Position numbers and translations under genes: made by a program. The notes under the pieces were generated by a model that was not told the DNA's origin, made no database searches, and was given only the letters and a program-made list of their open reading frames with translations. Below are positions 5,401 through 45,305 of a stretch of DNA of 64,000 nt, piece after piece. The DNA is from Iphione sp. A-MEVVRFRX5 (Eukaryota): contig OZ320315.1 of the NCBI GenBank assembly GCA_976226885.1, forward strand, positions 109,430,001-109,494,000, in the 5' to 3' direction. Each line of letters starts with the position of its first letter. The stretch's first letter is position 1.

Positions 5401-8400
5401 CTGTGGTTTTTACTCTGTAGCACTGAGGTGTACATTCCCCTGCATAGCATCAGATATTTGTAATTAAAGAGAGATCAGGAGGAAAGAAAAAGCAGTGAAT
5501 TTCTTATTCTCAAGCTTTTTTGTCCTTCTTCTGATGGCATAAAGTGGAAAGACTTATTAGATTCAACATCTCTCAGGATATTTTTTTTCCTTATCTTCTG
5601 AGTATGCTAGCACTTCCTTGGCTGAAAAACTCATTGATCACATCTACATGTTTTGTTTTGGCCATCTACACATCACTATTAGTATCTTCAATATCATAGT
5701 TTGGGAGTCTTCATCTGAAAAATGATCATTTATTTGTACCAAAATGTAACAAGAGTTGTTTCAATTTATATTCATCTGGTTAATGATATATTTTTTTAGG
5801 TACATTGACCATATATCTTTCCATGATTATAACTAAACTATTTGCAAGTGTTCTGGTGAGTTAATTTTTCTCAGATTCCTTGAACGGTTTGTCCCACTTG
5901 ACCAAATATTTGCAAAAAGTGCTTTCAACCTGGGCTTATTTAGGTTTTTTCTCTTAAAAGCACTTTCCAGATGTTGTTTGTTTATTACCATAAAGTTTTT
6001 ACAGTTGAAATACTACCAGGCTATATTGACATCAAATGTGTTGAAGAATGGTATTGAATTCATGCCATATGGTGTTCCTTCAGATCTTGCTTGTTGTAAT
6101 GAAAAAAGGTTTCAGAGAGATGTAGCTTTGTTTACTTAGTGTCCACTTTGATTGGCAGTATTTAAATAGAATTTAGGAGATGGTCCCTGTAAGATAAACT
6201 AAGTGAATTGTTTGTCATGATGAGGTCAATTAATATTCTATTCTCCACTGCATTATATGTGTTGATTCACTGATAATGTATGTTAGATGATGAGAGGCCA
6301 GGAAGAATGACAGCTTATCCATCTCTCTGGACTTTTCAGTAGACATATCCATATTGAAATCGTTTTGAATAATTACTTTCTATCCAAGAAGAAATGTTTG
6401 TATTTGACCTCCCAGTATTTCCAGGCAGTTGTTCACCTTAAAGTTTCCTTGCAGCTTTTTATATATTGTATGGAAACCATAGGAGGACAAGATCCCTAAC
6501 ACAAGATTCAGCACTATGAATAGGTTTAGGCCTATTAAAATGCAGTTTAGGGTGTGCTAGTTGAGTTTTGCTACTGGTATGACTCAAGAGAGTTCTTCTA
6601 GATGCTCATAGTTGTCTAGTCAGTGTATGAAGATGGGACAGAAAATTACCTGTGCTGTCAGATATTTCTGCATGATTTTATCTTACATTGCTCTGACATT
6701 GGTGTCTGATTCACATATAAGATGTTGTGATATTAAGACTAGACCACCATGAAATGGTGTCCAAGCCAACGGCATGAATCTTCTCATACCATACGATGCC
6801 ATGGGCTTGACTACCACTTAAGTGTGCATGAAGAGAAGGCTCTGGGAAAAAAGGACTACCTCAAAGCTAAAGAGGGTAGTCCAGGACCCGTAGAAAGGAC
6901 TTGATGGCTGGAAAATGAGAGATAGAGAAACTGGAGGATCAGGAAATGGCTGGGATGGGCCACAAAGTAGATACATCCATAAATAAGGAAAATTAAAGGA
7001 AATAACTTGTTTTTGTAAAACTTATTTTATGATTGTGCATATTACTTACAAACCATATTATAGACAATCAAGATTGTGGATGGAGGAAAAGTAACATTTT
7101 TCCTTCTTTACACATTTGCAACATTCAGAATCTGATTTACAGTCTATATATATTGCATTAAATTATTCATCATTCATTTTACAATAAGATATTCTTTATA
7201 ATGAATTTGACATAGATAGCCTTATAGTTGTCACATATCTTTACATATGGGGATGTGGCAATACAATGAACAGCTTGAACACACCCTGAATTAAAAAATT
7301 CTATCATATTTGTGTTTGTTATACTTTCAGTCCAGATCATACACATATCAAGACAAAGGATGACTGGCTTATTACAAAGGACTGTAACTACAATGTGCCA
7401 AATATTGAAGACTATTTCATACAAGTATGGCCTTAATAATAATGTGACCAGCCCTGGGAAAAGTGGTATCCAATGCATTCAAGTTAAAATGTCAAACAAC
7501 CATATTAGAGGCCTTAAAAATGAAGGAAATGGAATTCTAGCCATGGAAACCTCTATTTGATCATTTTTCATGTAGAATCTGTTGAAAAAAATTAGTTTTG
7601 GCAAATTCTTGTTCCTTATAAAGTAATTTTAAGTCATGTGATCAGATATGTAAATGAGCTTATTCACATAAATGCATTTATTAGGTTACCATAGTGATAA
7701 TGCTTAAGGATTATTTTAAATGCCTATATAATGTAGAAATATGAAAAAAGTTCTATCAAGAACTGAAACCCCTTTACAAATATCCTTTGTAGGACTGATT
7801 CTGTGCAAGAATGATAAGTTAAGATTAAATAACATATTTCACAGAATCCAAATGCTTTGTACTATAAAGTATCAAAGAATGCATTAAGTATTAAGTTACA
7901 TCTTTTTGCAAGAATAGTTATATCAACTTTGAATTGATATATCCCAGGATGTAGAAGGAGTATTTAGACAATCTTTGCACTAACTGTTGCCCCCAAACAT
8001 TCTTTAATTTCCATAGTTTGCAATTTGATACCTTTATTCCATGGCTGCTCACTCATATAGAATAACTTTCCTAAATCTTTAACTAATAGCCATTATACAT
8101 GGCTATTCTATAGGCTTACCATATGCAGCATGTGTAGCTTTCACATACAAAGTATTTCTGACATTAATCAGCCTAGTGACTGTGTTACTTAGCCATTGGG
8201 AATTTTTCTAAGGAATCTTTTATTATAATAATGATTATGCGGCATAATATATAATGAACAACTGTTTGCATTATAAAGAGGAGAGAAGCATAGAGAAGAC
8301 AATAGAAAAATCTTGAATCTTAAAAGAATTTGGGTTATTCTATAATGCAGTCAATTGTAATTACTTAGTTCTAACCAAGTCTTTTATCTCATTTAAATTC

Positions 8401-9002
8401 TCTTGGTCTTAGCTAGAGAAGAGTAGTTCAGCTGAGTTTCTTCTCATCCATGGTGGGGATGATGAAGTTTTCCAACCAGATAATGGTCTACAATTGATCC
8501 ATTATCTTTGGAATCACGGCCACAAAAATGCTGCTCTTCATATCTACCAAGGCGCAGGTCATATAATTGAAATGTCCTACGTTCCAGTATGCAAAGGTTT
8601 TCTTCATAAATTGTTGGGTAAGTGACCTTAATTTTGGCCATAAATGTGTTTAATTTGAAAGTAAAGAGAATGGGTTGTTATATGTGAACTCAGAGAATTT
8701 CATAGAATTGTGATAAATAAGAGCATCTTACCTTCCAGTATTTGAAGAAATAATTTAATCATGCAGTAAAGGCAAGTGATATGTTTAACTGCCTAAAAGC
8801 TTTTCTAAGCAAAAACAAGGGACACAGTTTTCAGTTTCCCAGATTATGCTTTTGTTCAGTAATACAAATTTCTTTCCATTTAGGAAAGAAGATTTATTGT
8901 GGTGGAGAAGATGCCCTTCATGCATATGCACAAAAAGATGCTTGGTATAAAGTGCTCAATTTCTTCAATACCAGACTGAGAAATCATGCCTCTAAACTTT
9001 GA
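2427..9002 (+). CDS. Acyl-CoA thioesterase / BAAT-like protein, copy 1 (type-I ACOT family, peroxisomal PTS1 SKL), intact, 422 aa
   Basis: Exons 2427-2649, 2877-3128, 3284-3459, 3787-3900, 4362-4447, 7331-7424, 8413-8617, 8884-9002. All introns are GT-AG, phases are compatible, 1269 nt open. Motifs: [42 protein letters not shown] (Ser nucleophile), HGGDD (Asp), GAGH (His), YCGGE..HAYAQ.DAW, C-terminal SKL. Family is clear; the specific ortholog is not. Confidence 0.93.
5750..6400 (-). mobile_element. Degraded CR1/L2-type LINE fragment (APE endonuclease C-terminus and linker) in copy-1 intron 5
   Basis: Minus-strand broken frames give [24 protein letters not shown] and FDVNIAW*YF. Many stops; boundaries approximate. 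Confidence 0.5.
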
Positions 9003-9136
9003 AGAGAAAGGATCAACAATGTTCACTTCCTTAGTCACATTATGTGTGAACATGGTCACCGATGAGCAAAATGGATGGTCAGACACAAAAACATCACAAC
9101 ATTTTCAGTGAAGACGAGAACAAAGTTTCTAACACA

Positions 9137-12719: not shown

Positions 12720-13817
12720 AAAGGCAGGATCACGAGAATTTCAAGTGCAGAAGTTATAAAAGAGCATCTGACGAAAGGTTTAAGAGGGAACTTTTAGAAA
12801 TTAATTGGACTCCCTACTATAACAGTAATAGTGTAGTATATATGGTTGAATTTTTGGAGAGTGTACTGTACAAGGTTTTTGATAAGGTTTGTCCATACAT
12901 ATCGATGAGAAAGAAATTGTATGAACCTGGAGTTGATAAAAAGCTGAAAAATTTGATACAAGATAAACATATGGCATATATTGCCCACAAACAAAAGGGT
13001 AGTTTGGAGACAAAACTAATATATTGTGTGAGTAAATATAAAGTACGGTCATACATAAAGAAAAAGAAGTATGTTTATTTCTCTAGTACGTTTGAGAAAT
13101 ATAAAACCTTGCCGAAGTGCTTCTGGAAACAGATAAAAGAGACAATTGTTCCAAATAAGAAAAAAACAGACAAAAACCAACTCACATTAAGAGATGGAGA
13201 TCGAGTACTATCTGGTGAAATGGCTATAAATTATATAAATGACTACTTTGTTAATATTGGTATAAAACTGCAGCGTGAGTTTAAATCAGAGGGTGGTAAT
13301 GATGCATTGCCAGAATCAAATTGTACATTTGCCTGGAGGGAAGTTACTGAGACAGAGATAAAGAAATTAATATTGGAAATTAAGGATGGTAAATCTTGTA
13401 ATATTGGTGATTTGTGCACAAAATGGGTAAAACGATGTCTTTTATTACTTGTTGAACAGGTACAAGCATTATGTAATTTATCCCTGAGAACCAATATGTT
13501 TCCAGATAATTTGAAAACGGGAAAAGTAATACCATTGTTTAAAGGGGGAGATCCTCTCCTAGCCAGTAATTATAGGCCTATATGTATATTATCTGTATTG
13601 TCAAAAATCTTAGAAAAATGTGTTGCTAGCCAACTATCCGCCTATCTGGAAAATAATGCATTGCTCTCAGATAGTCAGCACGGGTTCAGAAAGTCAAGAA
13701 GTACTGCTACTGCCTCTGTAAATTTTGTAAATGCAATATATCAGGCTTGGAATCTAAAGGAAGTTGTGGCAGCTATATTCGTCGATTGTAAAAAAACCTT
13801 CGACAGTGTGAACCATA
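12720..13817 (+). mobile_element. CR1/L2-type LINE ORF2, 5' half (linker plus RT N-terminus), interrupted by a DNA transposon
   Basis: ORF 12842-13831: FPDNLKTGKVIPLFKGGD...NYRPICILSVLSKILEK, QHGFRKSRST, FVDCKKTFDSVNH. Upstream RSYKRASDERFKRELLEINW is in the same frame. The 5' boundary is approximate. Confidence 0.88.
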
Positions 13818-14735
13818 CACTGAAAAAATAAAGTTGTCATGGACTTGTCTCTAGTAACAAGTTTTGGCTTGTCCTGTTGACGGTCATACAATGTACAAGT
13901 TTAGCATTGTCACTCAAAGTTTATGACAAGCGTGATTGTCATAAACTTGATGATGTGACAACTGTAGAATTGTCATAATAATAAACTAAACTAGTCATAA
14001 AGTTGTCTCTAGTGACAAGTTTTGCATTGTTATATTGACGGTCATACAATGTACAAGTTTAGCATTGTCATTGAAAGTTTATGACTAATAGGTTGTCATA
14101 AACTTGTCTAAGTAAGTACTTTATCCTTGTCATAATAAGGAGAGAATAAAAACAAGCAAAATTCAGGTAATTCAAATACAGTTTATTCAGAGAAGTTTAT
14201 CAGCTTTGATCCTATTTATATTAACAGATGGTTCCAAACCCCTTCAATAGAGTACCTCAGTCAGCTTAGGTCAATACACTGAAAAAATAAAGTTGTCATG
14301 GACTTGTCTCTAGTAACAAGTTTTGGCTTGTCCTGTTGACGGTCATACAATGTACAAGTTTAGCATTGTCACTCAAAGTTTATGACAAGCGTGATTGTCA
14401 TAAACTTGATGATGTGACAACTGTAGAATTGTCATAATAATAAACTAAACTAGTCATAAAGTTGTCTCTAGTGACAAGTTTTGCATTGTTATATTGACGG
14501 TCATACAATGTACAAGTTTAGCATTGTCATTGAAAGTTTATGACTAATAGGTTGTCATAAACTTGTCTAAGTAAGTACTTTATCCTTGTCATAATAAGGA
14601 GAGAATAAAAACAAGCAAAATTCAGGTAATTCAAATACAGTTTATTCAGAGAAGTTTATCAGCTTTGATCCTATTTATATTAACAGATGGTTCCAAACCC
14701 CTTCAATAGAGTACCTCAGTCAGCTTAGGTCAATA
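13818..14735 (+). repeat. Two tandem copies of the 459-bp left arm of the transposon
   Basis: 13818-14276 and 14277-14735 look identical by eye; each starts CACTG and ends ...GGTCAATA. Confidence 0.95.
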
Positions 14736-14737
14736 CA

Positions 14738-14781
14738 TTTCACCCCTGAGGAAGGCCAACTAGATGCCGAAATGTCGGGAA
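14738..14781 (+). ncRNA. Minimal type-I hammerhead ribozyme motif (PLE-associated); also at 18226-18269 and 21714-21757
   Basis: TTTCACCC-CTGAGGA-A-GGC-CAACTAGAT-GCC-GAAA-TGTC-GGGAA: CUGANGA and GAAA cores, helix II GGC/GCC, helix I CCC/GGG, short helix III (ATGT instead of the usual palindromic ACGT), cleavage triplet GUC. Such motifs are established for Penelope pLTRs. Confidence 0.72.
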
Positions 14782-14846
14782 CTTTGTAACACAGGATAAA
14801 GGTGATGGTGTGTCATTAGAAATGGTGTTCCTAAAAGGGTACATAA

Positions 14847-15147
14847 TGTAGTGTGCGCATGTAATAAGAGCGTATAATGCTAGAAGGATGGTTGGTCCGT
14901 GAGAACGGTCCGTAACACAATCCGCGATCCGTGATAGGATACAGTCCGTGACGACTTCCGCACTGGTAGAGGTACTGCGTAGTAGGGGTACTTTGCAGAT
15001 TGTTTATTTGCTACGCATAAAGCAGACGTCTAGACATCCTATTTTTAGTAACTCTTATGTAATGCTGTCATATATAAACCCATGTTTTCTGGAATAAACA
15101 GACCCTTTCTCTTTGCTCGCTAGAGAGAGACCATTCCATGCACAACA
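14847..15147 (+). mobile_element. 301-bp LTR-like dispersed repeat inside the cargo (also in units 2 and 3)
   Basis: TGTAGTG...CACAACA ends and an AATAAA near the 3' end; a diverged copy of the same length lies at 51529-51827 (-). No TSD found. Confidence 0.45.
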
Positions 15148-15836
15148 ATTTAGTGTATATTGGAGTGAAACTTATATTCTACTTTTGTCAAGATTATTTT
15201 ACTCAAATCCGTTGACTTCTTATTTCTCTCTAAGCTAGTCACGTTACAATTGTATAATGTTTGAACCAAGTATAAATGCATAGCCACTGCACAATAAGGT
15301 AACGTTATGGTAGTATGAGATAACATTATTCCATAATATTCAGATAACACTCTAGCACAAGGGGTACTGGGATAATGTTATATTATATGGTTTATTGGTT
15401 CATCTATAGTGTACAGATAGAAATACTTGAACTAAAGCCTTACTACGAAGTACTATAAGTGGTGAAAAAAACTTTTGATGAGCAGGTACTCATGTTCTTT
15501 GTATCAATGTTAAGCAGAACTAGTCTTATAAAACAGTGTAAAGCCATAATAAAGAATAAACATAAAAAGACTTACCCTAGTAGGATCTCAACTCATAACA
15601 AGGGAAATGATTTGATAACTCTGATAGAGAAATAGATTTGCATTCTTCTTGCTGTGCAATAACTGAAGTTCTCATCATTAGGAAAAGGAGAACTACCACA
15701 AAATAAATGAGAACACAAAGATATATATATCATGTGGCCACACAGAAGGGAAGAGTTGGATAAGTTCATAAACCACCTATAAGTAAGAGATCCAAACATC
15801 ACCTTTTCCTGCTAACATTTCAACAATAAAGCAACT

Positions 15837-17066
15837 CTTACGAAACTAGTATTAACAAACAACACCCTAAAATTTGAAAACAAAGTGTATCTGCAAACCC
15901 GGGGCACAGCCATGGGAACCAAAATGGCCCCCATCTATGCCAACATATTCATAGACCATCTAAAAAGAAAACTAATTGAACAAGGAAACATTCGACCGAG
16001 AATCTGGATGTGATTTATAGATGACATATTTGCAATCTATAGATGCACAGAAGATGAACTTATAGAGACCTTGAATCAATACAACAATTACCACCAAACC
16101 ATCAAATTCACATTTGAACACAGCACGAAAGAAGTCCATTATCTTGATACAACCATCTATGTAGATAACAATATGTGTTAACAAAGCAAGTTGTACACCA
16201 AACCCACAGACTCACACCAATACCTACATTATTCATCATATCACCCCAGACATCAAAAAAGGTCTACAGCATACTCAAAGGCAGTGTGGATCAGAATGAT
16301 CTGCAGCGAATACAGTGAATTCAACAAATCTAGCCAAGATCTGCTAAAATACCTTACCCTCCAAAATCACCCACATAGACACACAAAGCATGAAATGAAC
16401 TGGGCTAGAACAATAGACAGAGAAAGCTTGTTCCGACAAACAGTCAAACAAAACAAGGAGATCATCCCCTTTGTGATACAATACAACCCGCACAACACTA
16501 GGGTTCTAACACACCTATGCACAGCACAAAATTACCACACAGAGATCCCTGAGGACTCCAATTTCAACAAAGAAAAAATGATGATTGTTTATAAGCGAAG
16601 TAGCCACTTACGGGACATACTCACAGCATCTGAATTTCCAAGAACAAACACAAGACACTGATGTTCAACCTGCATGAGGATGTCATGCAGAATTTGCCCT
16701 CAGATCATCACCACAACATACGTCCGCTTGAGTGACAAAAGAAAGAAAATATTTGGATAAAATACCTGCATCACAAACAATGTGATATACAGCATCACCT
16801 GCCCAGTCTGTGGCCTACATTATATAGGAGAAACTGGACAGTCAATGTGAGAATAACTGTGCGAACACAAGTACCAAATACAGATCAGAAATCATGACTT
16901 ACTGGTCACCCAACACTGCATTGACGATGATGTACAGTCCCATGAAATCGTATGCACCATCTTAAACAATTCAGCATGAGATAAAAATGAACGACCACAG
17001 TTGGAGGAAGCATGGATTAGGAATCTTTCAACACCACATCTGCATGGACTGAACTTAAAACTTTAA
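15837..17066 (+). mobile_element. Penelope-like element (Neptune-like) RT plus Cys linker plus GIY-YIG endonuclease, pseudogenised, copy 1
   Basis: One frame with internal stops: YLQTRGTAMGTKMAPIYANIF, WM*FIDDIF, TIKFTFE, LYTKPTDSHQYLHYSSYHP, CSTC..SCRIC linker, NVIYSITCPVCGLHYIGETG (GIY-YIG), EAWI..L...GLN. Confidence 0.9.
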
Positions 17067-19324
17067 ACACTGTGACATAACGGTGTTACTAGGAGTGGTC
17101 GTTACGTCATGACATCACCTTGAACATTGCAGAAGCTGCACTAACAAGCACCTCAGTATGAGAAAATATGCCTACGGTGCCTTCGTGGCAGCCTCATCAA
17201 AACTACAACAACCCTAACCGCAATCAAACGAGATGGCAGACAACAGCAACAGCAACAACATCCAGTGTGGCTTATTTACACATTGGGTCACAAGTAACCG
17301 AGTACTCCTCCTTCATTTAAATAAGAAGCACCATGAACCAAAGAAAACACCGGGGGTATGGGGTAAGTACCTGTGTTACCTGTGTACTAACTCATACACA
17401 TGATACGGTTCTCTTAAATGACATTCATGTAAAACACATAACTAAGATCATCCGATACCAACTGTGATCCTGGGACCATAATTACACCAAAAAAGACCTA
17501 CTAAACTAAAAAAGACCTACACCATGGAGGGACGACAAAATCAACCCAACAAATGTTAGATTCTGTATCAAATACTTGAATCGCTCTTCTAGGGACAGCC
17601 CATCCACCTGGAAAACTGGAGACAACATACCATACAGCAGGTTACCCATAGGAGAGATCGTCGCGATGTATCGCGATCGCACGTTTTCGTAAATCTAAGG
17701 CACTAGATATCATTTAAGAGCAAAACCAATGCAACAGCAGTGTAGAGGAGGTTCTTAGCTTCATTTTGGTATAAAGCACTTCTTTCTAGGACCATTTTAA
17801 AGGTATGTGATGAGTTAATATGTTCACTCACCTCAGACAAGTGGCTCCTAACTCCACAACTGTTTTTCAAGGTATGCTGTTGTTGAATTTGAATGACATG
17901 TTTTTCTTTCTTTCACTGATCTCAGGAATACCTTAATAGGGAGTTAAGTAATTCTACTAATAATACTAATATATTTTATGGTTGTATATGTATTGATTTC
18001 CCTGAAATAGTGTGCTTTTAGATTCTGTCACTTTGCTTTTAAAATAACTGTTGTAGTGAGACCTAAAGGACGATTTGACAAGTGTGTGACATGTTTATGA
18101 CAAGGCAATATTGTCAGTTTGACTATACCATTGTCATTCATCATTTAGATTGTCAAAAACTCAATGACAACCCTAAAAATTGTCATATAGACAATGCCAG
18201 GACAAGTTAATTTTTTCAGTGTACATTTCACCCCTGAGGAAGGCCAACTAGATGCCGAAATGTCGGGAACTTTGTAACACAGGATAAAGGTGATGGTGTG
18301 TCATTAGAAATGGTGTTCCTAAAAGGGTACATAATGTAGTGTGCGCATGTAATAAGAGCGTATAATGCTAGAAGGATGGTTGGTCCGTGAGAACGGTCCG
18401 TAACACAATCCGCGATCCGTGATAGGATACAGTCCGTGACGACTTCCGCACTGGTAGAGGTACTGCGTAGTAGGGGTACTTTGCAGATTGTTTATTTGCT
18501 ACGCATAAAGCAGACGTCTAGACATCCTATTTTTAGTAACTCTTATGTAATGCTGTCATATATAAACCCATGTTTTCTGGAATAAACAGACCCTTTCTCT
18601 TTGCTCGCTAGAGAGAGACCATTCCATGCACAACAATTTAGTGTATATTGGAGTGAAACTTATATTCTACTTTTGTCAAGATTATTTTACTCAAATCCGT
18701 TGACTTCTTATTTCTCTCTAAGCTAGTCACGTTACAATTGTATAATGTTTGAACCAAGTATAAATGCATAGCCACTGCACAATAAGGTAACGTTATGGTA
18801 GTATGAGATAACATTATTCCATAATATTCAGATAACACTCTAGCACAAGGGGTACTGGGATAATGTTATATTATATGGTTTATTGGTTCATCTATAGTGT
18901 ACAGATAGAAATACTTGAACTAAAGCCTTACTACGAAGTACTATAAGTGGTGAAAAAAACTTTTGATGAGCAGGTACTCATGTTCTTTGTATCAATGTTA
19001 AGCAGAACTAGTCTTATAAAACAGTGTAAAGCCATAATAAAGAATAAACATAAAAAGACTTACCCTAGTAGGATCTCAACTCATAACAAGGGAAATGATT
19101 TGATAACTCTGATAGAGAAATAGATTTGCATTCTTCTTGCTGTGCAATAACTGAAGTTCTCATCATTAGGAAAAGGAGAACTACCACAAAATAAATGAGA
19201 ACACAAAGATATATATATCATGTGGCCACACAGAAGGGAAGAGTTGGATAAGTTCATAAACCACCTATAAGTAAGAGATCCAAACATCACCTTTTCCTGC
19301 TAACATTTCAACAATAAAGCAACT

Positions 19325-20554
19325 CTTACGAAACTAGTATTAACAAACAACACCCTAAAATTTGAAAACAAAGTGTATCTGCAAACCCGGGGCACAGCCA
19401 TGGGAACCAAAATGGCCCCCATCTATGCCAACATATTCATAGACCATCTAAAAAGAAAACTAATTGAACAAGGAAACATTCGACCGAGAATCTGGATGTG
19501 ATTTATAGATGACATATTTGCAATCTATAGATGCACAGAAGATGAACTTATAGAGACCTTGAATCAATACAACAATTACCACCAAACCATCAAATTCACA
19601 TTTGAACACAGCACGAAAGAAGTCCATTATCTTGATACAACCATCTATGTAGATAACAATATGTGTTAACAAAGCAAGTTGTACACCAAACCCACAGACT
19701 CACACCAATACCTACATTATTCATCATATCACCCCAGACATCAAAAAAGGTCTACAGCATACTCAAAGGCAGTGTGGATCAGAATGATCTGCAGCGAATA
19801 CAGTGAATTCAACAAATCTAGCCAAGATCTGCTAAAATACCTTACCCTCCAAAATCACCCACATAGACACACAAAGCATGAAATGAACTGGGCTAGAACA
19901 ATAGACAGAGAAAGCTTGTTCCGACAAACAGTCAAACAAAACAAGGAGATCATCCCCTTTGTGATACAATACAACCCGCACAACACTAGGGTTCTAACAC
20001 ACCTATGCACAGCACAAAATTACCACACAGAGATCCCTGAGGACTCCAATTTCAACAAAGAAAAAATGATGATTGTTTATAAGCGAAGTAGCCACTTACG
20101 GGACATACTCACAGCATCTGAATTTCCAAGAACAAACACAAGACACTGATGTTCAACCTGCATGAGGATGTCATGCAGAATTTGCCCTCAGATCATCACC
20201 ACAACATACGTCCGCTTGAGTGACAAAAGAAAGAAAATATTTGGATAAAATACCTGCATCACAAACAATGTGATATACAGCATCACCTGCCCAGTCTGTG
20301 GCCTACATTATATAGGAGAAACTGGACAGTCAATGTGAGAATAACTGTGCGAACACAAGTACCAAATACAGATCAGAAATCATGACTTACTGGTCACCCA
20401 ACACTGCATTGACGATGATGTACAGTCCCATGAAATCGTATGCACCATCTTAAACAATTCAGCATGAGATAAAAATGAACGACCACAGTTGGAGGAAGCA
20501 TGGATTAGGAATCTTTCAACACCACATCTGCATGGACTGAACTTAAAACTTTAA
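19325..20554 (+). mobile_element. Penelope-like RT-GIY-YIG pseudogene, copy 2
   Basis: Copy 1 shifted by +3488, with the same stops. Confidence 0.9.
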
Positions 20555-22812
20555 ACACTGTGACATAACGGTGTTACTAGGAGTGGTCGTTACGTCATGA
20601 CATCACCTTGAACATTGCAGAAGCTGCACTAACAAGCACCTCAGTATGAGAAAATATGCCTACGGTGCCTTCGTGGCAGCCTCATCAAAACTACAACAAC
20701 CCTAACCGCAATCAAACGAGATGGCAGACAACAGCAACAGCAACAACATCCAGTGTGGCTTATTTACACATTGGGTCACAAGTAACCGAGTACTCCTCCT
20801 TCATTTAAATAAGAAGCACCATGAACCAAAGAAAACACCGGGGGTATGGGGTAAGTACCTGTGTTACCTGTGTACTAACTCATACACATGATACGGTTCT
20901 CTTAAATGACATTCATGTAAAACACATAACTAAGATCATCCGATACCAACTGTGATCCTGGGACCATAATTACACCAAAAAAGACCTACTAAACTAAAAA
21001 AGACCTACACCATGGAGGGACGACAAAATCAACCCAACAAATGTTAGATTCTGTATCAAATACTTGAATCGCTCTTCTAGGGACAGCCCATCCACCTGGA
21101 AAACTGGAGACAACATACCATACAGCAGGTTACCCATAGGAGAGATCGTCGCGATGTATCGTGATCGCACGTTTTCGTAAATCTAAGGCACTAGATATCA
21201 TTTAAGAGCAAAACCAATGCAACAGCAGTGTAGAGGAGGTTCTTAGCTTCATTTTGGTATAAAGCACTTCTTTCTAGGACCATTTTAAAGGTATGTGATG
21301 AGTTAATATGTTCACTCACCTCAGACAAGTGGCTCCTAACTCCACAACTGTTTTTCAAGGTATGCTGTTGTTGAATTTGAATGACATGTTTTTCTTTCTT
21401 TCACTGATCTCAGGAATACCTTAATAGGGAGTTAAGTAATTCTACTAATAATACTAATATATTTTATGGTTGTATATGTATTGATTTCCCTGAAATAGTG
21501 TGCTTTTAGATTCTGTCACTTTGCTTTTAAAATAACTGTTGTAGTGAGACCTAAAGGACGATTTGACAAGTGTGTGACATGTTTATGACAAGGCAATATT
21601 GTCAGTTTGACTATACCATTGTCATTCATCATTTAGATTGTCAAAAACTCAATGACAACCCTAAAAATTGTCATATAGACAATGCCAGGACAAGTTAATT
21701 TTTTCAGTGTACATTTCACCCCTGAGGAAGGCCAACTAGATGCCGAAATGTCGGGAACTTTGTAACACAGGATAAAGGTGATGGTGTGTCATTAGAAATG
21801 GTGTTCCTAAAAGGGTACATAATGTAGTGTGCGCATGTAATAAGAGCGTATAATGCTAGAAGGATGGTTGGTCCGTGAGAACGGTCCGTAACACAATCCG
21901 CGATCCGTGATAGGATACAGTCCGTGACGACTTCCGCACTGGTAGAGGTACTGCGTAGTAGGGGTACTTTGCAGATTGTTTATTTGCTACGCATAAAGCA
22001 GACGTCTAGACATCCTATTTTTAGTAACTCTTATGTAATGCTGTCATATATAAACCCATGTTTTCTGGAATAAACAGACCCTTTCTCTTTGCTCACTAGA
22101 GAGAGACCATTCCATGCACAACAATTTAGTGTATATTGGAGTGAAACTTATATTCTACTTTTGTCAAGATTATTTTACTCAAATCCGTTGACTTCTTATT
22201 TCTCTCTAAGCTAGTCACGTTACAATTGTATAATGTTTGAACCAAGTATAAATGCATAGCCACTGCACAATAAGGTAACGTTATGGTAGTATGAGATAAC
22301 ATTATTCCATAATATTCAGATAACACTCTAGCACAAGGGGTACTGGGATAATGTTATATTATATGGTTTATTGGTTCATCTATAGTGTACAGATAGAAAT
22401 ACTTGAACTAAAGCCTTACTACGAAGTACTATAAGTGGTGAAAAAAACTTTTGATGAGCAGGTACTCATGTTCTTTGTATCAATGTTAAGCAGAACTAGT
22501 CTTATAAAACAGTGTAAAGCCATAATAAAGAATAAACATAAAAAGACTTACCCTAGTAGGATCTCAACTCATAACAAGGGAAATGATTTGATAACTCTGA
22601 TAGAGAAATAGATTTGCATTCTTCTTGCTGTGCAATAACTGAAGTTCTCATCATTAGGAAAAGGAGAACTACCACAAAATAAATGAGAACACAAAGATAT
22701 ATATATCATGTGGCCACACAGAAGGGAAGAGTTGGATAAGTTCATAAACCACCTATAAGTAAGAGATCCAAACATCACCTTTTCCTGCTAACATTTCAAC
22801 AATAAAGCAACT

Positions 22813-24042
22813 CTTACGAAACTAGTATTAACAAACAACACCCTAAAATTTGAAAACAAAGTGTATCTGCAAACCCGGGGCACAGCCATGGGAACCAAAA
22901 TGGCCCCCATCTATGCCAACATATTCATAGACCATCTAAAAAGAAAACTAATTGAACAAGGAAACATTCGACCGAGAATCTGGATGTGATTTATAGATGA
23001 CATATTTGCAATCTATAGATGCACAGAAGATGAACTTATAGAGACCTTGAATCAATACAACAATTACCACCAAACCATCAAATTCACATTTGAACACAGC
23101 ACGAAAGAAGTCCATTATCTTGATACAACCATCTATGTAGATAACAATATGTGTTAACAAAGCAAGTTGTACACCAAACCCACAGACTCACACCAATACC
23201 TACATTATTCATCATATCACCCCAGACATCAAAAAAGGTCTACAGCATACTCAAAGGCAGTGTGGATCAGAATGATCTGCAGCGAATACAGTGAATTCAA
23301 CAAATCTAGCCAAGATCTGCTAAAATACCTTACCCTCCAAAATCACCCACATAGACACACAAAGCATGAAATGAACTGGGCTAGAACAATAGACAGAGAA
23401 AGCTTGTTCCGACAAACAGTCAAACAAAACAAGGAGATCATCCCCTTTGTGATACAATACAACCCGCACAACACTAGGGTTCTAACACACCTATGCACAG
23501 CACAAAATTACCACACAGAGATCCCTGAGGACTCCAATTTCAACAAAGAAAAAATGATGATTGTTTATAAGCGAAGTAGCCACTTACGGGACATACTCAC
23601 AGCATCTGAATTTCCAAGAACAAACACAAGACACTGATGTTCAACCTGCATGAGGATGTCATGCAGAATTTGCCCTCAGATCATCACCACAACATACGTC
23701 CGCTTGAGTGACAAAAGAAAGAAAATATTTGGATAAAATACCTGCATCACAAACAATGTGATATACAGCATCACCTGCCCAGTCTGTGGCCTACATTATA
23801 TAGGAGAAACTGGACAGTCAATGTGAGAATAACTGTGCGAACACAAGTACCAAATACAGATCAGAAATCATGACTTACTGGTCACCCAACACTGCATTGA
23901 CGATGATGTACAGTCCCATGAAATCGTATGCACCATCTTAAACAATTCAGCATGAGATAAAAATGAACGACCACAGTTGGAGGAAGCATGGATTAGGAAT
24001 CTTTCAACACCACATCTGCATGGACTGAACTTAAAACTTTAA
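22813..24042 (+). mobile_element. Penelope-like RT-GIY-YIG pseudogene, copy 3
   Basis: Copy 1 shifted by +6976, with the same stops. Confidence 0.9.
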
Positions 24043-25199
24043 ACACTGTGACATAACGGTGTTACTAGGAGTGGTCGTTACGTCATGACATCACCTTGAA
24101 CATTGCAGAAGCTGCACTAACAAGCACCTCAGTATGAGAAAATATGCCTACGGTGCCTTCGTGGCAGCCTCATCAAAACTACAACAACCCTAACCGCAAT
24201 CAAACGAGATGGCAGACAACAGCAACAGCAACAACATCCAGTGTGGCTTATTTACACATTGGGTCACAAGTAACCGAGTACTCCTCCTTCATTTAAATAA
24301 GAAGCACCATGAACCAAAGAAAACACCGGGGGTATGGGGTAAGTACCTGTGTTACCTGTGTACTAACTCATACACATGATACGGTTCTCTTAAATGACAT
24401 TCATGTAAAACACATAACTAAGATCATCCGATACCAACTGTGATCCTGGGACCATAATTACACCAAAAAAGACCTACTAAACTAAAAAAGACCTACACCA
24501 TGGAGGGACGACAAAATCAACCCAACAAATGTTAGATTCTGTATCAAATACTTGAATCGCTCTTCTAGGGACAGCCCATCCACCTGGAAAACTGGAGACA
24601 ACATACCATACAGCAGGTTACCCATAGGAGAGATCGTCGCGATGTATCGCGATCGCACGTTTTCGTAAATCTAAGGCACTAGATATCATTTAAGAGCAAA
24701 ACCAATGCAACAGCAGTGTAGAGGAGGTTCTTAGCTTCATTTTGGTATAAAGCACTTCTTTCTAGGACCATTTTAAAGGTATGTGATGAGTTAATATGTT
24801 CACTCACCTCAGACAAGTGGCTCCTAACTCCACAACTGTTTTTCAAGGTATGCTGTTGTTGAATTTGAATGACATGTTTTTCTTTCTTTCACTGATCTCA
24901 GGAATACCTTAATAGGGAGTTAAGTAATTCTACTAATAATACTAATATATTTTATGGTTGTATATGTATTGATTTCCCTGAAATAGTGTGCTTTTAGATT
25001 CTGTCACTTTGCTTTTAAAATAACTGTTGTAGTGAGACCTAAAGGACGATTTGACAAGTGTGTGACATGTTTATGACAAGGCAATATTGTCAGTTTGACT
25101 ATACCATTGTCATTCATCATTTAGATTGTCAAAAACTCAATGACAACCCTAAAAATTGTCATATAGACAATGCCAGGACAAGTTAATTTTTTCAGTGTA

Positions 25200-26497
25200 G
25201 TATTCTGTTGAAAAAATTATATGGAATGGGTATTAAAGACCAAATAGTATGGTTTGCAAGCTATCTAAAAAATAGATCGATCCAAACTTATGGTAATGGC
25301 TATATTAGTGAAAAAGCATTAATTAACTGTGGAGTCCCTCAGGGGTCCACACTTGGACCGATTCTCTTTGCAATTTTTATTAATGATCTACCAATTAAAT
25401 TGGGAATTACTAACACACTTTTATATGCAGATGACACTGTGTCTTTTGTCACTGGGACGACAGTGACTCAGGTGCAAGAAAAATTGCAAATACTATGTGA
25501 TAAACTATTTTTATGGTTCAAAGAGAACAAAATTTGTATCAATGTCAAAAAGACTTAAATAGTAGTGTTTAACTACAAAGACAATGGTGGAATATATAAG
25601 AATATGGGATGTCATCTTGGAAATAGCCAACTTGAAATAGTTGACAAGTACAATTATTTGGGAGTAGTAATGGACGAACGTTTAAGTTTTAAGATATTCT
25701 TAAAGTCGAAAATTAATAGTATCTCCTGGAAACTATGGTATCTATACAAAATCAGGGAATATATTCCAAGAACAATGATGTGTCTGTTAATTAAAACGTT
25801 TATTGTTCCAGTACTTGAATATGGAATAATATTGTGTTCAGCAAAAAACAAAATTCTGGTTAGATTGGTTAACACTTTTGGGTATCGGACAAGCAAAATT
25901 CTGGGAATATTGAAGAAAGATATATATGGTATGTTAAATATGCAAGATATTTTTTGTTGGCGTGAAATTCAACTTGTATGTTTAATGTGGTCGGAACAAA
26001 GTAAATATACCCCACTGAGCACGAGAAGTAGCGTTAGATCTAGCAAGCAACATATGGTTAAGAATCCTAGGGTGCATATGGAAAAATTTCGACATTCGCC
26101 CATGTACAATAGTATATTCATATGGAACAGTCTTCCAAACTGGGTGGTAAATACTGACAAATTGAGGATATTGAAAACAAATCTTAAAAAGCACTATGAA
26201 AAATTCAGGAGAGAAAACTTTAAAGTTGTCTAAAGTTGTCTAATCAAGGTAACAAACATTATATTGATGAGTTGTGTAGTTATCTTAACTACTATGGTTG
26301 TCAAGTTTTTTATTGTCAATTTTTATTTAAATTATTAATGTTTGAACTATGTCTTTTATTAATGAAACTTTCAACTTAAATCTATGTGCTTATAATTTGG
26401 AGAGTTACCTAAGTAATATCTCATTGCTTTAACTATACAAATTGCCTATGCATAACTACAGAGGATATGGTTATATTCATTTCATTTCATCTCATAA
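25200..26497 (+). mobile_element. CR1/L2-type LINE ORF2, 3' half (RT core to 3' end)
   Basis: GVPQGSTLGPILFAIFINDL, LYADDT, YNYLGV; one in-frame stop at 25556-25558. Joins the 5' half in frame (VNH|SILLKKL) when 13818-25199 is removed. A (CATTT)n-like run near 26478-26497 is a tentative 3' tail. Confidence 0.85.
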
Positions 26498-28714: not shown

Positions 28715-31700
28715 TTAAAGTTTAGCACTTTTGACTCTGAGTCTGCTATTAAAGAAGTTCAGCACCTTGAACCAAGCATCTTCTTGTGCATATGCATGAA
28801 GGACATCTTCTCCACCATAATAAATCATTTTTCCTGAAAAGAAAGACATTTGCTTAAACTGAAATGCCAAGATCTTGCTTAGCTGGAGATAATAAATCAT
28901 CTTAAGGAGGTATGCAGGAAATTAGACATATTACATTTTGCCACTGTTAAATTACTTGAATAATTCTTTCACATACTGGTTTGGTATACATTTTCTTTAC
29001 TAAAGTACAAACATCTAGTAAATTTATTGAGTTGTTTTACCTAACTCTTTATCATAAAACACTTTGCTTGGTGGAGTATAGGGTCCTTCAATAAGATGAC
29101 CAGCGCCTTGATAGACATGAAGCTGTGCATTTTTCTGGCCATGATTCCAAAGCCTTTGCATTAATTGTGGACCATTATCTGGCATTATAAGTTCATCATC
29201 TCCACCATGAATGAGAAGAAACTCAGCACAACTGCTCTTTTCCATCTGAAACCAGAAAATTCACAAATTCTCGTCAGTCATAAGAAGATTCAAACACCAA
29301 GACCTATACAATTTGCACATCAACACTTTCCTAATTTGTCTATCTTTTTTTTAAAATCACAGTACAGGCATTAGATGTAGTCAACTACACTTTGCTATGC
29401 ACTGGCTGCTTGCTTGGTCATACTGACTACCTTCCCATGTCTCCTCCACAACAAGGAATCTGTAAATTCTGTTCTAAATTATATGCAGGTCTACCAGTTT
29501 GTAAAAATAATTATGTTTAGCCACCCATGAAGTTACACAGCAATATGATGATAATGTACAGTGGTTCTATGTGATGGCTATGTATTATGGCCACGGGTTA
29601 AAGATTTAGCACAGCTATTCCAGATAAGGACATACCGGTATGAAACAGTTTTCAATATTTGGAACTTTGTAGTAACAGTCCTTTAAGATAAACAGGTCGT
29701 CTTTAGTTCTCATATATTTCAAATCTGGGCTGAAAAATACAGTGGAAGACAAATACAGTGGAATCCTATGACATAGGGTCTGATACTTAGGTAAATGAGT
29801 GTACAATATGTTCATAGCTGTTACAGTTACAGTTTTGGGTATTGAGGACCCAGGTCTTTGCCACTGAGGTAGGCCAAAACTATGTTCATAGTTGTTTTTA
29901 TGGTTTACTAATATATTACTGTACATAAAGCTATGTCAAGTATGTGCACAAATATAAAATGTTTTATCTAGATAACAGAATGGATAGATTGGTATGGATA
30001 GATTAAAGCAATAGACAAAGAGACGAGACAGTGTTCACATTATAATTCAAGCATGACAAAAACATATCATTTCCCTTGGTTTACCAGTGTGTTTGTCCGA
30101 AATATAGTTTGTCAGTATATAGTGGTCTTATTGTGCAATAGGTTATACTAATAATTATAGAAACTTCACTGTAATTATATGTAACAATAAATAATAAAGA
30201 TAGTGTATAATCTTTCTGCCATACCTCTGTACCATTCAGCTTGCTCTATAAGGAAGGTGTTGACCTACTTCTAACAATGTTCTATTTAGCATGATTATGC
30301 TCTAATGAAAATATTTACATTATACAGGGTATATTTACTCCTTTGTAGCTTAGTGGGATGGCGCAACTGTAGAATGTGCTGTTTATTGAGACGACTGCCT
30401 TCACCTGATACACGGAATGAAAAATCAGATTTTATAATCCCATCATAACATTTAAACTTGAAAGAGTAATAATATATTATAGCTAAAGATGTTTGGGAGT
30501 AGGTTGTATACTAGGCTAAACCTTTAGTTGACAAATGGATTAATGTAGTTGTTTTTAACCACTATACACTGTATATGCCTTTGAAGCTATGTCAGATGTA
30601 CATCACTAGATCCTTTTAATGTTATTTGATATGGATAATATTCAAGTACTAAAAATGAATTTTTTTTGCCACGTTTCAGCTGAAGTACTAAAAATGAATT
30701 ACATCCTTATTTACATTGACTCAGGTGACAACATCGGTCAGATATATCACTTTGTTTTGTCATTTTGCCTTACAAACATACAATTAGCAGGACAAAATGT
30801 CCTTTGCTACAAACAGTACATTCCGTTTCAATGAAGTCCTTGATGGTGGAATTCTAGAGAGTAAAAGAAGTGGGAGGATCCAGATGAGAAAGGAAAAGAT
30901 TTTGGAGGGAGTCAAGAAAAAAGAAGGAAAGGAAGGGGAAAAAAGGATCCCAAAGTAACAACTTAAATGGCAATCTAGCTGTGTTCTGTAGTAAAATTCA
31001 ATTAAAATCACTTGAATAGTTTCTGAAAATATTGGCAGCTACACTTCAGAGGGGGAAATACACATCTAAGGTTGAATACAGTTTGAGAGGAAACCAATAT
31101 TAACTAAAACTAAATGTTATAACCCTTAAGTTTTGGATGCCATAATGCATTTTTGAAATTAATTTCAAACATATGGTCATGAAATATGATCTGAAACAAA
31201 GGCCATCGGCATTATCTTCTACCTAACTGGCATCCTATCATTCCTTGTTTGCTAATCAATCACTGTAGGCCCTATTCCAATACAATATAATCCAATTTCC
31301 AATATGGTAACTCTCTTTGCGGATGATACGCTGATACAAATAGCATCTAAGTCCATAGAGGAATTAAATTGCAAAACACAAACTGTGTGTGATGAATTAT
31401 CCAGTTGGTGTCTAGAGAATAAGTTGATTTTAAATCCTAAGAAAAGCAATATTATGACAGTATTTCCTGGTAGGATATGTACAGAGGGTCTGAGAAGTAA
31501 GATCTTTCTTGCGGGAGACTTAGTCCAATATGTTGACTGCTATAAGTATTTAGGTGTGTTATTTGATAATCATCTAAAATTTGACATGGAACTAAATAAA
31601 GTAACCACTCAGGTAAAGAAAAAACTCTTTGTGTTGAACAAAGTTAGAGGTATTTTACGGCCCAGAGATTTTCTGTTACTATACAAAACTTGCCTAAGAC

Positions 31701-34700
31701 CACATATTGACTATTCAATAGTTTTTCTAACATGTAATACAAAGAAAAAACTAGATATCCTTCAAAGAATACAAAATAGGGTGCTTATGTTGGTATACAA
31801 TATTGACAATAAGTACAATCAAGGTGACCGTGTGGGTCCAGTGTGGTTACAGTACCTTCATAATACATATAATATTATGAGTATAAGGAGAAGAATGGAC
31901 TTATTTACAGTATCTCTAATCTATAAAATGGTGAGTTTAAATATTGTTCCCTTAGTGGGAGATACTTGCTTGCATCATCAGGATGAACTTTGTGTTAAAC
32001 TCTGTACTCTGAGCTTGTGAAAAATTCCTTAATTTACAATAGGTATATGATATGGAACAACCTTAATGAGCTTTATAAAAATAGTGTATCCTGTAAGGAT
32101 TTAATGAGAGCCTACTCTATGATATCTCTTACCAACCATGACTACTGATGTACTTTACCCTTATTGGAAAGAGTATTGTTGATTACAATGTACATTCAGC
32201 TGCAGATTACATAAGCTGGTATGTATTTCTGCACAATGAAAAACGCCTTTATGAGGCGACTTGTTGGAAATAAAATTATATCTTATCTTATCTTATCTTA
32301 TCTTATTTACACCTGCCATTTCTGTACATAAGCCTATTCTACAGTTAAGATAAGATAAGATAAGATAAGATAAGAAGAATTTATTAACCATCCAACAGCT
32401 CGCCTCTTTGAGGCGTTTTTACAGGTATGGATGTACATCTTGTCAATGTTGTAGTAATATTGGACAATGCAACTGATTAGATCAATAAAGAATTAAATAG
32501 ATAATTAAAAGAAAGAAATTGAAAAGAAAATCAACTAAATTCTAACATAGACTGCTCATTTCACACAAGTCATAGCTATGCTGAGGAATAATATTATCAA
32601 GTAATGATATATAGGGTTAGTTAGTATTATGTTAGTAACAATTAGGTAGTTAGGCTAATGGGATTAAAATTTAGACAGCATTTTGAAGGTCTCCATATCA
32701 TCTGCTGCTCTAATGAAAGGATCTAGTTCAAACAAATGCGTCAGTCACTCACCTTATCTGTGATTGTACTGATGTGTAAAGCTATCTCAGCTCCCTTTGA
32801 CAAACCTATAATACCAAGCTGGTCTTTAATAACACTGGGATGCTCATTTAACCAATCAACAGCCTCCTAGATACAAATACACAATATCATCAGTACACAC
32901 AACTAAACAAGAGAAGAATCATAATAGGTACATTCCATATAAATAATTATTTACTTAGCATATTTCTTTTCATTAATCTTTTTTCATTCATGAATTCTTA
33001 AAAGTATATTAAGCTTAGAATAATCTATGTAGTTTTCCAGAAAGATTTCATATGGGTAAATGTATATACTGAAGCATTGTATAATGATAATGTAGCATAT
33101 AAATAATCCAATGTGTTCAGTGTTGCTTAGCAATATAATGGCAGTGCTGCTAACTGGTACTAATTCATCATTTAAGTGGTAAACTGACAAGAGTGCTGCC
33201 TGTAAGGTAACAGACCGAGGGCAACTGATATTACATTAATTGTTTTGTTACTTGTCAAGCTACTGTTAAAATCCCACTCTAGGCAAGTAGTGACAATACA
33301 GATGTAAAATATTTCATTTCTTTTTTTTAATTACCAACTATCTGTGTATTGTAATAAACAAATGCTGTCTGTCTGCATTTTCAGGTGATAATGAAGATAA
33401 TTTGCAAACATTTGAAAATAATATACCAATATTTATGGAGGCAAAAAATTACTACCGATGAAATTTTAATTGGTGAATTTTCAAATGTTTAAATGTGGCC
33501 TTTCAGCAGTATTATATTTTTGGACAAAACGACTTCAGAATATGATGATTAATGAGCATTATGAAGTTTAGATTAAATGGCCTTAAAAATAGCTTATGAC
33601 AAGACTCTTCCAGCTTTTATAAAGTCTTGCTGAACCCCTTTGAAATATATTCCCCTGCTACGTTACTTCCAGTTAGATTTTGATACAGGACCACCAAAGA
33701 AAGAAACATTACCTCAAAATACTCAAGGTCGATAACTGAACCTTTCTTTGGTAGATCTTTATAGTTGAAGTATGCTAAAGCAAAGCTGACAAATCCTCTG
33801 GAGGCTAACATAGCTGCACGAGTTTCCCGGAGACCACCAGTTGAACCATAAAGATCAATAATTCCTGGAAACCGTTGACCCTGTGACCCTAGAACAACAA
33901 AAGTTACATTTCAAAGGTCACACCTGATGAATAATTATTGAAATACTGGCCACAGGAAAATTTAGGTTAATGATCACTGAGCTAGTCATCTGCTCCTTCA
34001 TGGATTCAAAATCACATATCAGTCTTTAGGTGTATGTTTCATCTTCTGTCTTCTACTATCTATCCATGACATCAACCATCAGTCAAATCAAATAATGCAT
34101 TTTACTTTATGCGATATATTTATCAATTCTACAAAGACACCAATAGCATTTATGAGAACCCACAGAACTAGCAGTTTCCTACGTTAGTTTAGCTTTAAAG
34201 GTCTCATTTTCAAAAAGCATACACACATACTAAACAGACACATGGGAAAAAACCATTTGTATGTGTAAAGGTGTGAAACATTCATGGCCCTTCTATTAAT
34301 GCCTATTTTCAAGATATATTCTGATTATTAATATAGAAGTCAACTTTTATTAGTAAGAGCAATAACAGTAATACCTCTTGGTACAAAAAGTGTCCCTCTA
34401 ACTCTTCCCACTTCTATAGGTACTCTCATTACATGCTGCCCCATGTAACGTCTTGTGATATTAGCCTGTGCAAGTGATGCATCCATTGCAGAATGTGTTG
34501 GATTGATGTGATCTTCTAAAACTGACACTGACATCATGAAAGGAGTGGTGACATCACGTTTAGCAAATCTAGCTGTGATATCATCAGTAACAGCACTCCA
34601 GAAGAGACCCATAGGATCTACACCTTCAAATAGTAAGGAAAAAAAAACTGAATATAATCAATTTTGGACCGATTTACCAGTGCAGTTTCTAAGTTGAGTT

Positions 34701-39434: not shown

Positions 39435-39763
39435 CCTTTACTATACACCACTTACTCTCTAGATTATGTACGTGCATTCTCAAATACTGGTGCCTTTGCT
39501 AAAGCTTTACATATCATTTATTACTGACACAGATCTCTAAAAAAAAAGGAAGATAACTGCTACAAATCCCAGATATTAAACCTTTTGGATCATCATTTAG
39601 TCTAGTAGTACTTTATCTAATTCAGGTTATATCTGAAAGAATATTATATGAGCATTTATCAATGTTTGTTTTGGACTAGAAGAAATAGAAAAGTTGGTTA
39701 CTTCTTGGTGCTATTCTTGTTTTTACAGCAGGGCGCTTCAGAAAGGCAAGTCTTGATACAAGA

Positions 39764-44846: not shown

Positions 44847-45305
44847 ACTGAGGAAAAAGGACTGGCAATAATCTCTCTTCTAATAGGGTATACCCTAAAA
44901 TGGTTAATTATGAGCAAAATAAAGGATTGGACATGGTACATTGATTAAGAAAAATTTTATCCCATTGAAAAGTCCTAACAACACTCCTAATGTATTGTAG
45001 TATAATGACTTTCATAGTACATGTAATTAATATTGTGGTCAGGGCCTATACTGGCTCCATCAACAGGTAGGGCCAGAGCCTGTACTGGCTTTGCCCTGAG
45101 GTGTCCAGTGGGGGAAGGAATTACGTACTATAAAAGATAGTTTTGATGGAGTTGTACACAGTTGAATCTTTATTCATCAGTAATAAACTTTTAAACTCAA
45201 ACTGTCGTATGGCTCCTCAATGGGGGTGACAGTATATCATCAGATGTGCTATTAGGTATTAATATATAACCTAAAATGCACTGGTCCAAATCAAACATGT
45301 AAGTT

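What the first reader, a model, noticed from the sequence alone, without database searches (positions are those of the whole stretch)
13818..25197. Russian-doll self-insertion: a cargo-loaded CACTA-like transposon inserted into its own internal TA
The array is TA-[L][L][PR][PR][PR], with L a 459-bp left arm and PR the cargo plus right arm. One L plus one PR gives a 3945-bp element. The segment 14277-18221 is exactly such an element, with its own TA duplication (GGTCAA-TA|CACTG at 14275-77; CAGTG|TA-CATTTC at 18221-24). That TA is the element's own internal L|P junction (GGTCAA-TA-CATTTC, intact at 14729-14741). A head-to-tail tandem would give L-PR-L-PR, which is not seen. Nesting explains L-L-PR-PR; the third PR needs one more event (unequal crossover, or a third nesting with one L lost or collapsed in assembly). 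Inference: recent local hopping with a self-target hotspot.
Basis: partly seen in the sequence, partly recalled or inferred. Interest (0 to 1): 0.85.

Follow-up and report, generated by a model that had tools for sequence, protein, structure and literature searches.

The report
Jumping gene nested inside itself
A 3.9-kb non-autonomous DNA transposon in an invertebrate genome has a second, identical copy inserted at a TA inside it, plus one extra repeat unit; the structure is real and recent, but this kind of self-insertion is already known and nothing shows a special self-targeting hotspot.

Summary
Window 13818-25197 is L-L-PR-PR-PR: two identical 459-bp left arms and three 3488-bp units that differ by two CpG transitions.

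- **One insertion into a LINE.** The array sits in a LINE reverse-transcriptase frame. Removing it and one TA restores that frame, so the target duplication is 2 bp (TA).
- **Self-nesting fits.** Inserting the 3945-bp monomer into its own TA at offset 458 in silico reproduces 13818-21709 with one mismatch. No head-to-tail junction exists.
- **The third PR is undecided.** Adding one PR unit, triple nesting with loss of one L, and re-insertion of an L-PR-PR composite all reproduce the sequence equally well. One nesting plus one homology-driven unit gain needs the fewest events and no hotspot. The "self-target hotspot" is therefore not supported.
- **Family.** CACTG...CAGTG termini, a 2-bp duplication and clustered TTGTCA subterminal repeats fit animal CACTA/CMC-type elements. 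No transposase is present here.
- **Cargo.** It includes a 5'-truncated, stop-ridden Penelope-like fragment (reverse transcriptase plus GIY-YIG).
- **Not testable.** No sequencing runs were listed and no other family copy could be reached, so unit number and family size remain open.

The scan had already noted this stretch (s1-325176). An unchecked note mentions a "CACTG element" on another piece of this genome (s1-356295).

The parts
12842..13817 (+). Upstream part of the host LINE reverse-transcriptase frame, interrupted by the array
   Evidence: Pfam RVT_1 profile positions 6-85
13816..13817 (.). Left copy of the outer TA target-site duplication
13818..14276 (+). L1: left arm of the outer element (457 bp) plus the TA that flanks the inner element on its left (14275-14276)
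   Evidence: Identical to L2; left terminus CACTGAAAAAAT
14277..18221 (+). Inner complete 3945-bp element (L2 + PR1), CACTG...CAGTG, flanked by TA/TA
14277..14600 (+). Left subterminal region: two ~157-bp sub-repeats rich in TTGTCA / TGACAA motifs (same in L1 at 13818-14141)
   Evidence: motif background 0.55 per kb
14734..14735 (.). Intact internal TA (offset 458-459 of the monomer), homologue of the site hit in the outer copy
15834..17060 (+). 5'-truncated Penelope-like fragment (RT + GIY-YIG), one frame with in-frame stops; repeated at 19322-20548 and 22810-24036
   Evidence: Profile positions 336-746 of 748, E 9e-126; tblastn; full-length relatives carry RVT_1 + GIY-YIG
18076..18221 (+). 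Right subterminal region and right terminus ATTTTTTCAGTG (same at 21564-21709 and 25052-25197)
18222..18223 (.). TA flanking the inner element on its right
18224..21709 (+). PR2: cargo plus right arm, with a private CpG transition at 21162
21710..21711 (.). TA at the PR2|PR3 junction, the same junction sequence as PR1|PR2
21712..25197 (+). PR3: cargo plus right arm, with a private CpG transition at 22095
25198..25199 (.). Right copy of the outer TA target-site duplication
25200..25552 (+). Downstream continuation of the host LINE RT frame
   Evidence: Pfam RVT_1 profile positions 87-188, following 6-85 upstream

Best explanation
A 3945-bp non-autonomous cut-and-paste DNA transposon of CACTA/CMC type inserted into a LINE reverse-transcriptase gene with a TA duplication. 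It has CACTG...CAGTG termini, a 2-bp TA target duplication and TTGTCA subterminal repeats, and it carries a dead Penelope-like fragment. A second, identical copy then inserted in the same orientation into the TA at offset 458 of the first, just inside its left arm, giving L-L-PR-PR. That copy most likely came from the sister chromatid or a recent nearby copy and was mobilised by a transposase encoded elsewhere. One further homology-driven event between the tandem 3.5-kb units added the third PR and necessarily copied the same junction. That event was either unequal sister-chromatid exchange or mis-registered gap repair after an excision. Shown: the structure, the duplications, the exact fit of the nesting model, and that the events are recent. 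Inferred: the donor, the order of events, and the recombinational origin of the third PR.
For: Repeat units are exact. Both junction types join a true transposon terminus to the same internal TA, which a random tandem duplication would not do. The simulated insertion of the monomer into itself with a 2-bp duplication equals 13818-21709 except for the site at 21162. No head-to-tail junction exists. The outer TA duplication is proven by the RT frame and by Pfam profile continuity, 6-85 then 87-188. The only two differences are private CpG transitions with PR1 ancestral at both. This is the signature of real, very recent, separately mutating copies rather than sequencing noise. The monomer has 323 TAs, so a model needing one hit is more parsimonious than one needing two or three hits on the same TA. 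Self-insertions of TIR elements are documented for rice MITEs (PMC5172404) and, per a title cited in PMC9604107 (its ref. 5), for transposon self-insertions mapped by Genome ARTIST.
Against: The sequence cannot tell the recombinational model for the third PR from triple nesting minus one L, or from re-insertion of an L-PR-PR composite. All three give the observed 11380 bp with the same 2 mismatches. No reads were available to confirm unit numbers. No other family member or transposase was reachable, so mobility of the 3945-bp monomer as a unit is inferred from this locus alone.
Confidence: 0.58

Rival explanations
1. True self-target hotspot. The same internal TA was hit two or three times independently. 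Either three elements nested and one L was later lost, or an L-PR-PR composite excised using an inner left end and an outer right end and re-inserted at the same TA of another copy.
For: Both variants reproduce the observed sequence exactly. Only one junction type is seen. The outer and inner targets share TTCAC three bases from the TA in opposite orientation, which is weak (P about 0.04).
Against: It needs more events and a very strong site preference, about 1 in 323 TAs per hit if unbiased. The outer insertion, in a LINE, is at an otherwise dissimilar site (9 of 24 flanking bases identical, P 0.35). There is no second example.
Confidence: 0.15
2. Alternative (sister-chromatid) transposition. 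The left end from one chromatid and the right end from the other were used together and integrated into the element's own TA. This duplicates L alone or PR alone in single events, repeated to give L2 and PR3.
For: By reasoning from the Ac/Ds alternative-transposition model (my own knowledge, not tested here), such events yield exactly terminus-TA-internal junctions without a head-to-tail junction, as seen.
Against: At least three such events at the same TA are required, or one plus a nesting. There is no independent evidence, and this behaviour is not known for this family.
Confidence: 0.1
3. Assembly error in unit number. The junctions are real but the true locus has fewer or more L or PR units, for example L-L-PR-PR or L-L-L-PR-PR-PR.
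For: Units of 3.5 kb at more than 99.9% identity are hard to count. No reads could be laid on the locus.
Against: There are no N runs in the window. PR2 and PR3 each carry a private CpG transition, which gives an assembler anchors to separate them. An assembler cannot invent the L|L and PR|PR junction sequences from a single element.
Confidence: 0.12

Closest known systems
Self-insertions and nested multimers of TIR elements (rice MITEs Castaway and Gaijin, PMC5172404; transposon self-insertions mapped by Genome ARTIST, a title cited as ref. 5 in PMC9604107; the maize 'double Ds', from my own knowledge)
   Same: A complete copy of an element lies inside another copy of the same element, flanked by its own target duplication.
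   Different: Here the orientation is direct, whereas double Ds is inverted. The element is a 3.9-kb cargo-bearing one rather than a MITE. An extra partial unit (a third PR) makes a mixed array.
Animal CACTA/EnSpm (CMC) elements with a 2-bp duplication, such as ENS1_Cis of Ciona and CMC-NA MITEs (PMC6004678); fungal ESTA, 'EnSpm-like with TA TSDs' (PMC12730594); Chapaev3 with CACTG termini (PMC3014272)
   Same: 5'-CAC...GTG-3' termini (CACTG/CAGTG is an accepted CACTA terminus, PMC10741241), a 2-bp duplication, here TA, and multiple subterminal repeats.
   Different: There is no transposase in this copy or window, so the defining protein could not be examined. Plant CACTA elements make 3-bp duplications, and Chapaev3 makes TWA.
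Pack-MULE / Pack-CACTA transduplication
   Same: A non-autonomous TIR element carries foreign coding sequence between its arms.
   Different: The foreign piece is a 5'-truncated, stop-ridden Penelope-like retroelement, not host gene fragments. Retrotransposition into the element is the simpler origin.
Tc1/mariner/pogo
   Same: TA target duplication.
   Different: From my own knowledge, their termini usually start CAG. Arrays of subterminal repeats over 150-320 bp are not typical of them.

Membership tests
CACTA/EnSpm-Mirage-Chapaev (CMC) DNA transposons | Termini 5'-CAC...GTG-3' (CACTA or CACTG / TAGTG or CAGTG) | tested here: met
   CACTGAAAAAAT and ATTTTTTCAGTG at all five ends; criterion from PMC10741241 and PMC6004678
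CACTA/EnSpm-Mirage-Chapaev (CMC) DNA transposons | Short target-site duplication of 2-4 bp (2 bp in animal CACTA) | tested here: met
   A 2-bp TA: removing the array plus one TA restores the LINE RT frame, with RVT_1 profile 6-85 then 87-188. A 3-bp duplication is excluded (ATA vs TAG).
CACTA/EnSpm-Mirage-Chapaev (CMC) DNA transposons | Multiple subterminal repeats in both orientations | tested here: met
   TTGTCA/TGACAA motifs: 17 of the 19 in the monomer lie in its first 320 or last 150 bp, against 0.55 per kb background; two ~157-bp sub-repeats in L
CACTA/EnSpm-Mirage-Chapaev (CMC) DNA transposons | DDE transposase with C(2)C and H(3-4)H motifs (in the autonomous partner) | not testable with these tools
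   No transposase in the element or window. The other pieces of this genome are not readable here. Earlier notes of intact CACTA elements are unchecked leads.
Tc1/mariner/pogo | TA target duplication | tested here: met
Tc1/mariner/pogo | DD(E/D) transposase of this superfamily and its characteristic TIRs | not testable with these tools
   No transposase present. The termini start CAC, not CAG; that this is atypical rests on my own knowledge.
Nested self-insertion | Inner copy complete with both termini, flanked by a duplication of a site that is single in the intact copy | tested here: met
   14277-18221 is flanked by TA/TA; the site is intact at 14728-14741
Nested self-insertion | Removing the inner copy and one duplication copy regenerates an intact host element | tested here: met
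   The simulated nesting equals the observed 13818-21709 with 1 mismatch
Nested self-insertion | The whole array is explained by nesting alone | tested here: not met
   A triple nest would be 11839 bp and the observed array is 11380 bp, so one L (459 bp) is missing or one PR is extra
Penelope-like element (the cargo) | Reverse transcriptase followed by a GIY-YIG endonuclease in one ORF | tested here: met
   Profile of 16 full-length relatives, positions 336-746 of 748, E 9e-126. The relatives carry RVT_1 + GIY-YIG. The copy lacks the N-terminal 335 profile positions and has in-frame stops.
Pack-type transduplication | Cargo is captured host gene fragments | tested here: not met
   The only recognisable cargo is a retroelement fragment; the rest has no Pfam match

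The most novel reading that the evidence does not exclude
The TA at offset 458, just inside the block of transposase-binding subterminal repeats, is a genuine homing site. Incoming copies would be tethered by transposase bound to the resident left arm and integrate repeatedly at this one TA, so the family builds nested arrays at many loci.
Probability: 0.12. Interest if true: 0.55.

Novelty: new member of a known kind. Interest (0 to 1): 0.3.

Why it matters
It is a clean, very young example showing that a CACTA-like family with a TA duplication has been mobile recently in this lophotrochozoan genome. It also shows that such elements can ferry dead retroelement pieces and seed tandem arrays. 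The locus is a useful marker for transposase activity and for unequal exchange, and a caution for repeat annotation and assembly. It does not open a new mechanism, because self-insertion of TIR elements and later array growth are established phenomena.

Tried and rejected
**Read and contig evidence**
- Read support: the look-up of sequencing runs listed none, so read laying could not be used.
- Independent assemblies: exact-protein look-ups of the junction-reading LINE ORF and of the cargo ORF were not on record.
- The word-indexed protein search of the 159-aa cargo segment found nothing, which is probably an effect of its length window.

**Other family copies**
- None in the window.
- The TIR pattern had no match in the metagenome, viral or prokaryotic genome collections. 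This was expected for an animal element and says nothing about the host genome.

**Readings considered and dropped**
- Hammerhead ribozyme at the start of P (14746-14772, CTGAGGA...GAAA): no Rfam match at E up to 10. Helix II does not pair canonically. The loose pattern occurs 15 times in the window. Treated as not significant.
- Full-length Penelope cargo: rejected, because the profile search finds only positions 336-746 plus a small duplicate of 399-430 at 15720-15815.
- 3-bp duplication (Chapaev3-like TWA): rejected by the flanks and by the RT frame.
- Head-to-tail tandem or circle-junction origin: rejected, no CAGTG(TA)CACTG junction.
- Using the two SNPs to order events: uninformative, since both are private derived CpG changes.
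- Shared target motif: only a 5-base run, P about 0.04.
Full report
**Observation**

The repeat structure is exactly as described.
- A 459-bp unit occurs twice without a mismatch, at 13818-14276 and 14277-14735.
- A 3488-bp unit occurs three times, at 14736-18223, 18224-21711 and 21712-25199.
- These three units have only two differences. One is private to PR2 at 21162 and one is private to PR3 at 22095.
- The 25-nt terminal sequence occurs five times in the window, twice as a left end and three times as a right end. It occurs nowhere else, and 0 matches are expected by chance.
- The termini are CACTGAAAAAAT and ATTTTTTCAGTG. The inverted repeat extends to about 58 nt at 76% complementarity.

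**The array is one insertion with a 2-bp TA duplication**

- The array interrupts a LINE reverse-transcriptase frame that starts at 12842.
- Upstream, the frame matches Pfam RVT_1 profile positions 6-85. Downstream of the array it matches positions 87-188.
- In a script I joined the flanks after removing the array and one TA. This gave an open frame reading ...FDSVNH-SILLKKLYGMG.... The join was used only for that frame test and was sent to no search.
- A 3-bp duplication is excluded: the flanks read ATA and TAG, and removing 3 bp would break the frame.

**Nature of the element**

- The 3945-bp monomer (14277-18221) encodes no transposase.
- TTGTCA/TGACAA motifs cluster in its first ~320 bp and last ~150 bp. 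Seventeen of the 19 in the monomer lie there, against a background of 0.55 per kb.
- The left arm contains two ~157-bp sub-repeats.
- CAC...GTG termini with CACTG/CAGTG are an accepted CACTA signature (PMC10741241).
- Animal CACTA elements make 2-bp duplications (PMC6004678), and an EnSpm-like lineage with TA duplications exists in fungi (PMC12730594).
- Structurally the element therefore fits a non-autonomous CACTA/CMC-type transposon. The defining transposase could not be examined, so membership is provisional.

**Cargo**

- Positions 15834-17060 (+) match profile positions 336-746 of 748 of Penelope-like proteins (E 9e-126; tblastn).
- Full-length relatives from the representative library carry RVT_1 plus GIY-YIG.
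- The fragment lacks the N-terminal half and is in a single frame with several in-frame stops.
- A small duplicate of RT positions 399-430 lies just upstream, at 15720-15815.
- This pattern looks like a 5'-truncated retroelement that landed in the transposon, rather than Pack-type capture.
- The remaining ~2 kb of cargo has no recognisable match.

**Test of the nesting model**

- Both junction types join a genuine transposon terminus to the same internal TA (GGTCAA-TA-CACTG and CAGTG-TA-CATTTC). A breakpoint-random tandem duplication would not do this.
- In silico I inserted the monomer into its own TA at offset 458-459 with a 2-bp duplication. The result equals the observed 13818-21709 (7892 bp) with a single mismatch, the variant at 21162.
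- No head-to-tail junction is present.
- At least one self-insertion, in direct orientation, is therefore the best reading of L-L-PR-PR.

**The third PR**

- A triple nest would be 11839 bp. The observed array is 11380 bp, exactly one L (459 bp) short.
- Three models reproduce the observed sequence equally, each with two mismatches:
  - a double nest plus one PR unit;
  - a triple nest minus one L;
  - insertion of an L-PR-PR composite into a monomer.
That event would be unequal sister-chromatid exchange or mis-registered gap repair after excision.
- The other two models need two or three independent hits on one of 323 TAs.
- The outer and inner targets share only a 5-base run (TTCAC, three bases from the TA, in opposite orientation). 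Its P is about 0.04 against random TA pairs from the window.

**Age and reality of the copies**

- Both differences are CpG transitions (CG to TG at 21162, CG to CA at 22095), and PR1 retains the CpG at both sites.
- That is the pattern of real, separately mutating, very young copies. It also gives an assembler anchors to tell the units apart.
- The window has no N runs.
- An error in unit number cannot be excluded, because no sequencing run was listed.

**What could not be done**

- No reads were available and no independent contigs were on record.
- No other family member was found in the window.
- The metagenome, viral and prokaryotic collections held no match to the termini, as expected for an animal element.
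- The rest of this genome is not readable with these tools.
- Earlier scan notes, all unchecked, mention the same stretch as a Penelope-carrying transposon (s1-325176), a "CACTG element" with cargo on another piece (s1-356295), and intact CACTA/EnSpm elements (s1-325163, s1-313956). These are the obvious places to look for the autonomous partner.

**Comparison and verdict**

- Self-insertion of TIR elements is documented for rice MITEs (PMC5172404). A title cited in PMC9604107 (ref. 5) refers to mapping transposon self-insertions. The maize double Ds, from my own knowledge, is an inverted analogue.
- This locus is a tidy, recent, direct-orientation example in a probable annelid or other lophotrochozoan genome (organism inferred from earlier notes only), with secondary array growth.
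- It is a new member of a known kind and of modest interest.

Noticed in passing
window 14746-14772 (also 18234-18260 and 21722-21748): A hammerhead-like core (CTGAGGA...GAAA) lies 10 bp after the internal TA, on the same strand as the Penelope fragment. Helix II does not pair canonically, Rfam gives no match, and the loose pattern occurs 15 times in the window, so it is probably chance or a decayed remnant.
   Followed up: partly
window 14845-15043 vs 51632-51829 (minus strand): A 199-bp stretch of the cargo is 78% identical to a stretch near one of the duplicated gene copies at 51.6 kb. It is an unidentified short repeat family, and its flanks do not align.
   Followed up: partly
window 21162 and 22095: The only two differences among the three 3488-bp units are CpG transitions. 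This suggests cytosine methylation and deamination acting on this young repeat.
   Followed up: partly
window 15720-15815: A short duplicate of Penelope RT profile positions 399-430 lies directly upstream of the truncated fragment that starts at 15834. This may reflect the partial-tandem insertion habit of Penelope-like elements.
   Followed up: no
window 2369-9003, 39706-44847, 49560-52627: A three-fold segmental duplication at 62-86% identity flanks the TE-rich region that holds the array. A tandem array with 105-bp copy spacing lies at 52515-53250. Another note of this scan reads these as ACOT gene copies.
   Followed up: no
window 31304-32020 and 38144-39298: Two further reverse-transcriptase ORFs (RVT_1) lie on the plus strand, so the 10-39 kb interval is a nest of retroelements.
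   Followed up: no
window 13804-13808 and 14739-14743: Both TA targets have TTCAC (or its complement GTGAA) three bases from the TA, in opposite orientation relative to the insert. P is about 0.04, too weak to call a target motif.
   Followed up: yes
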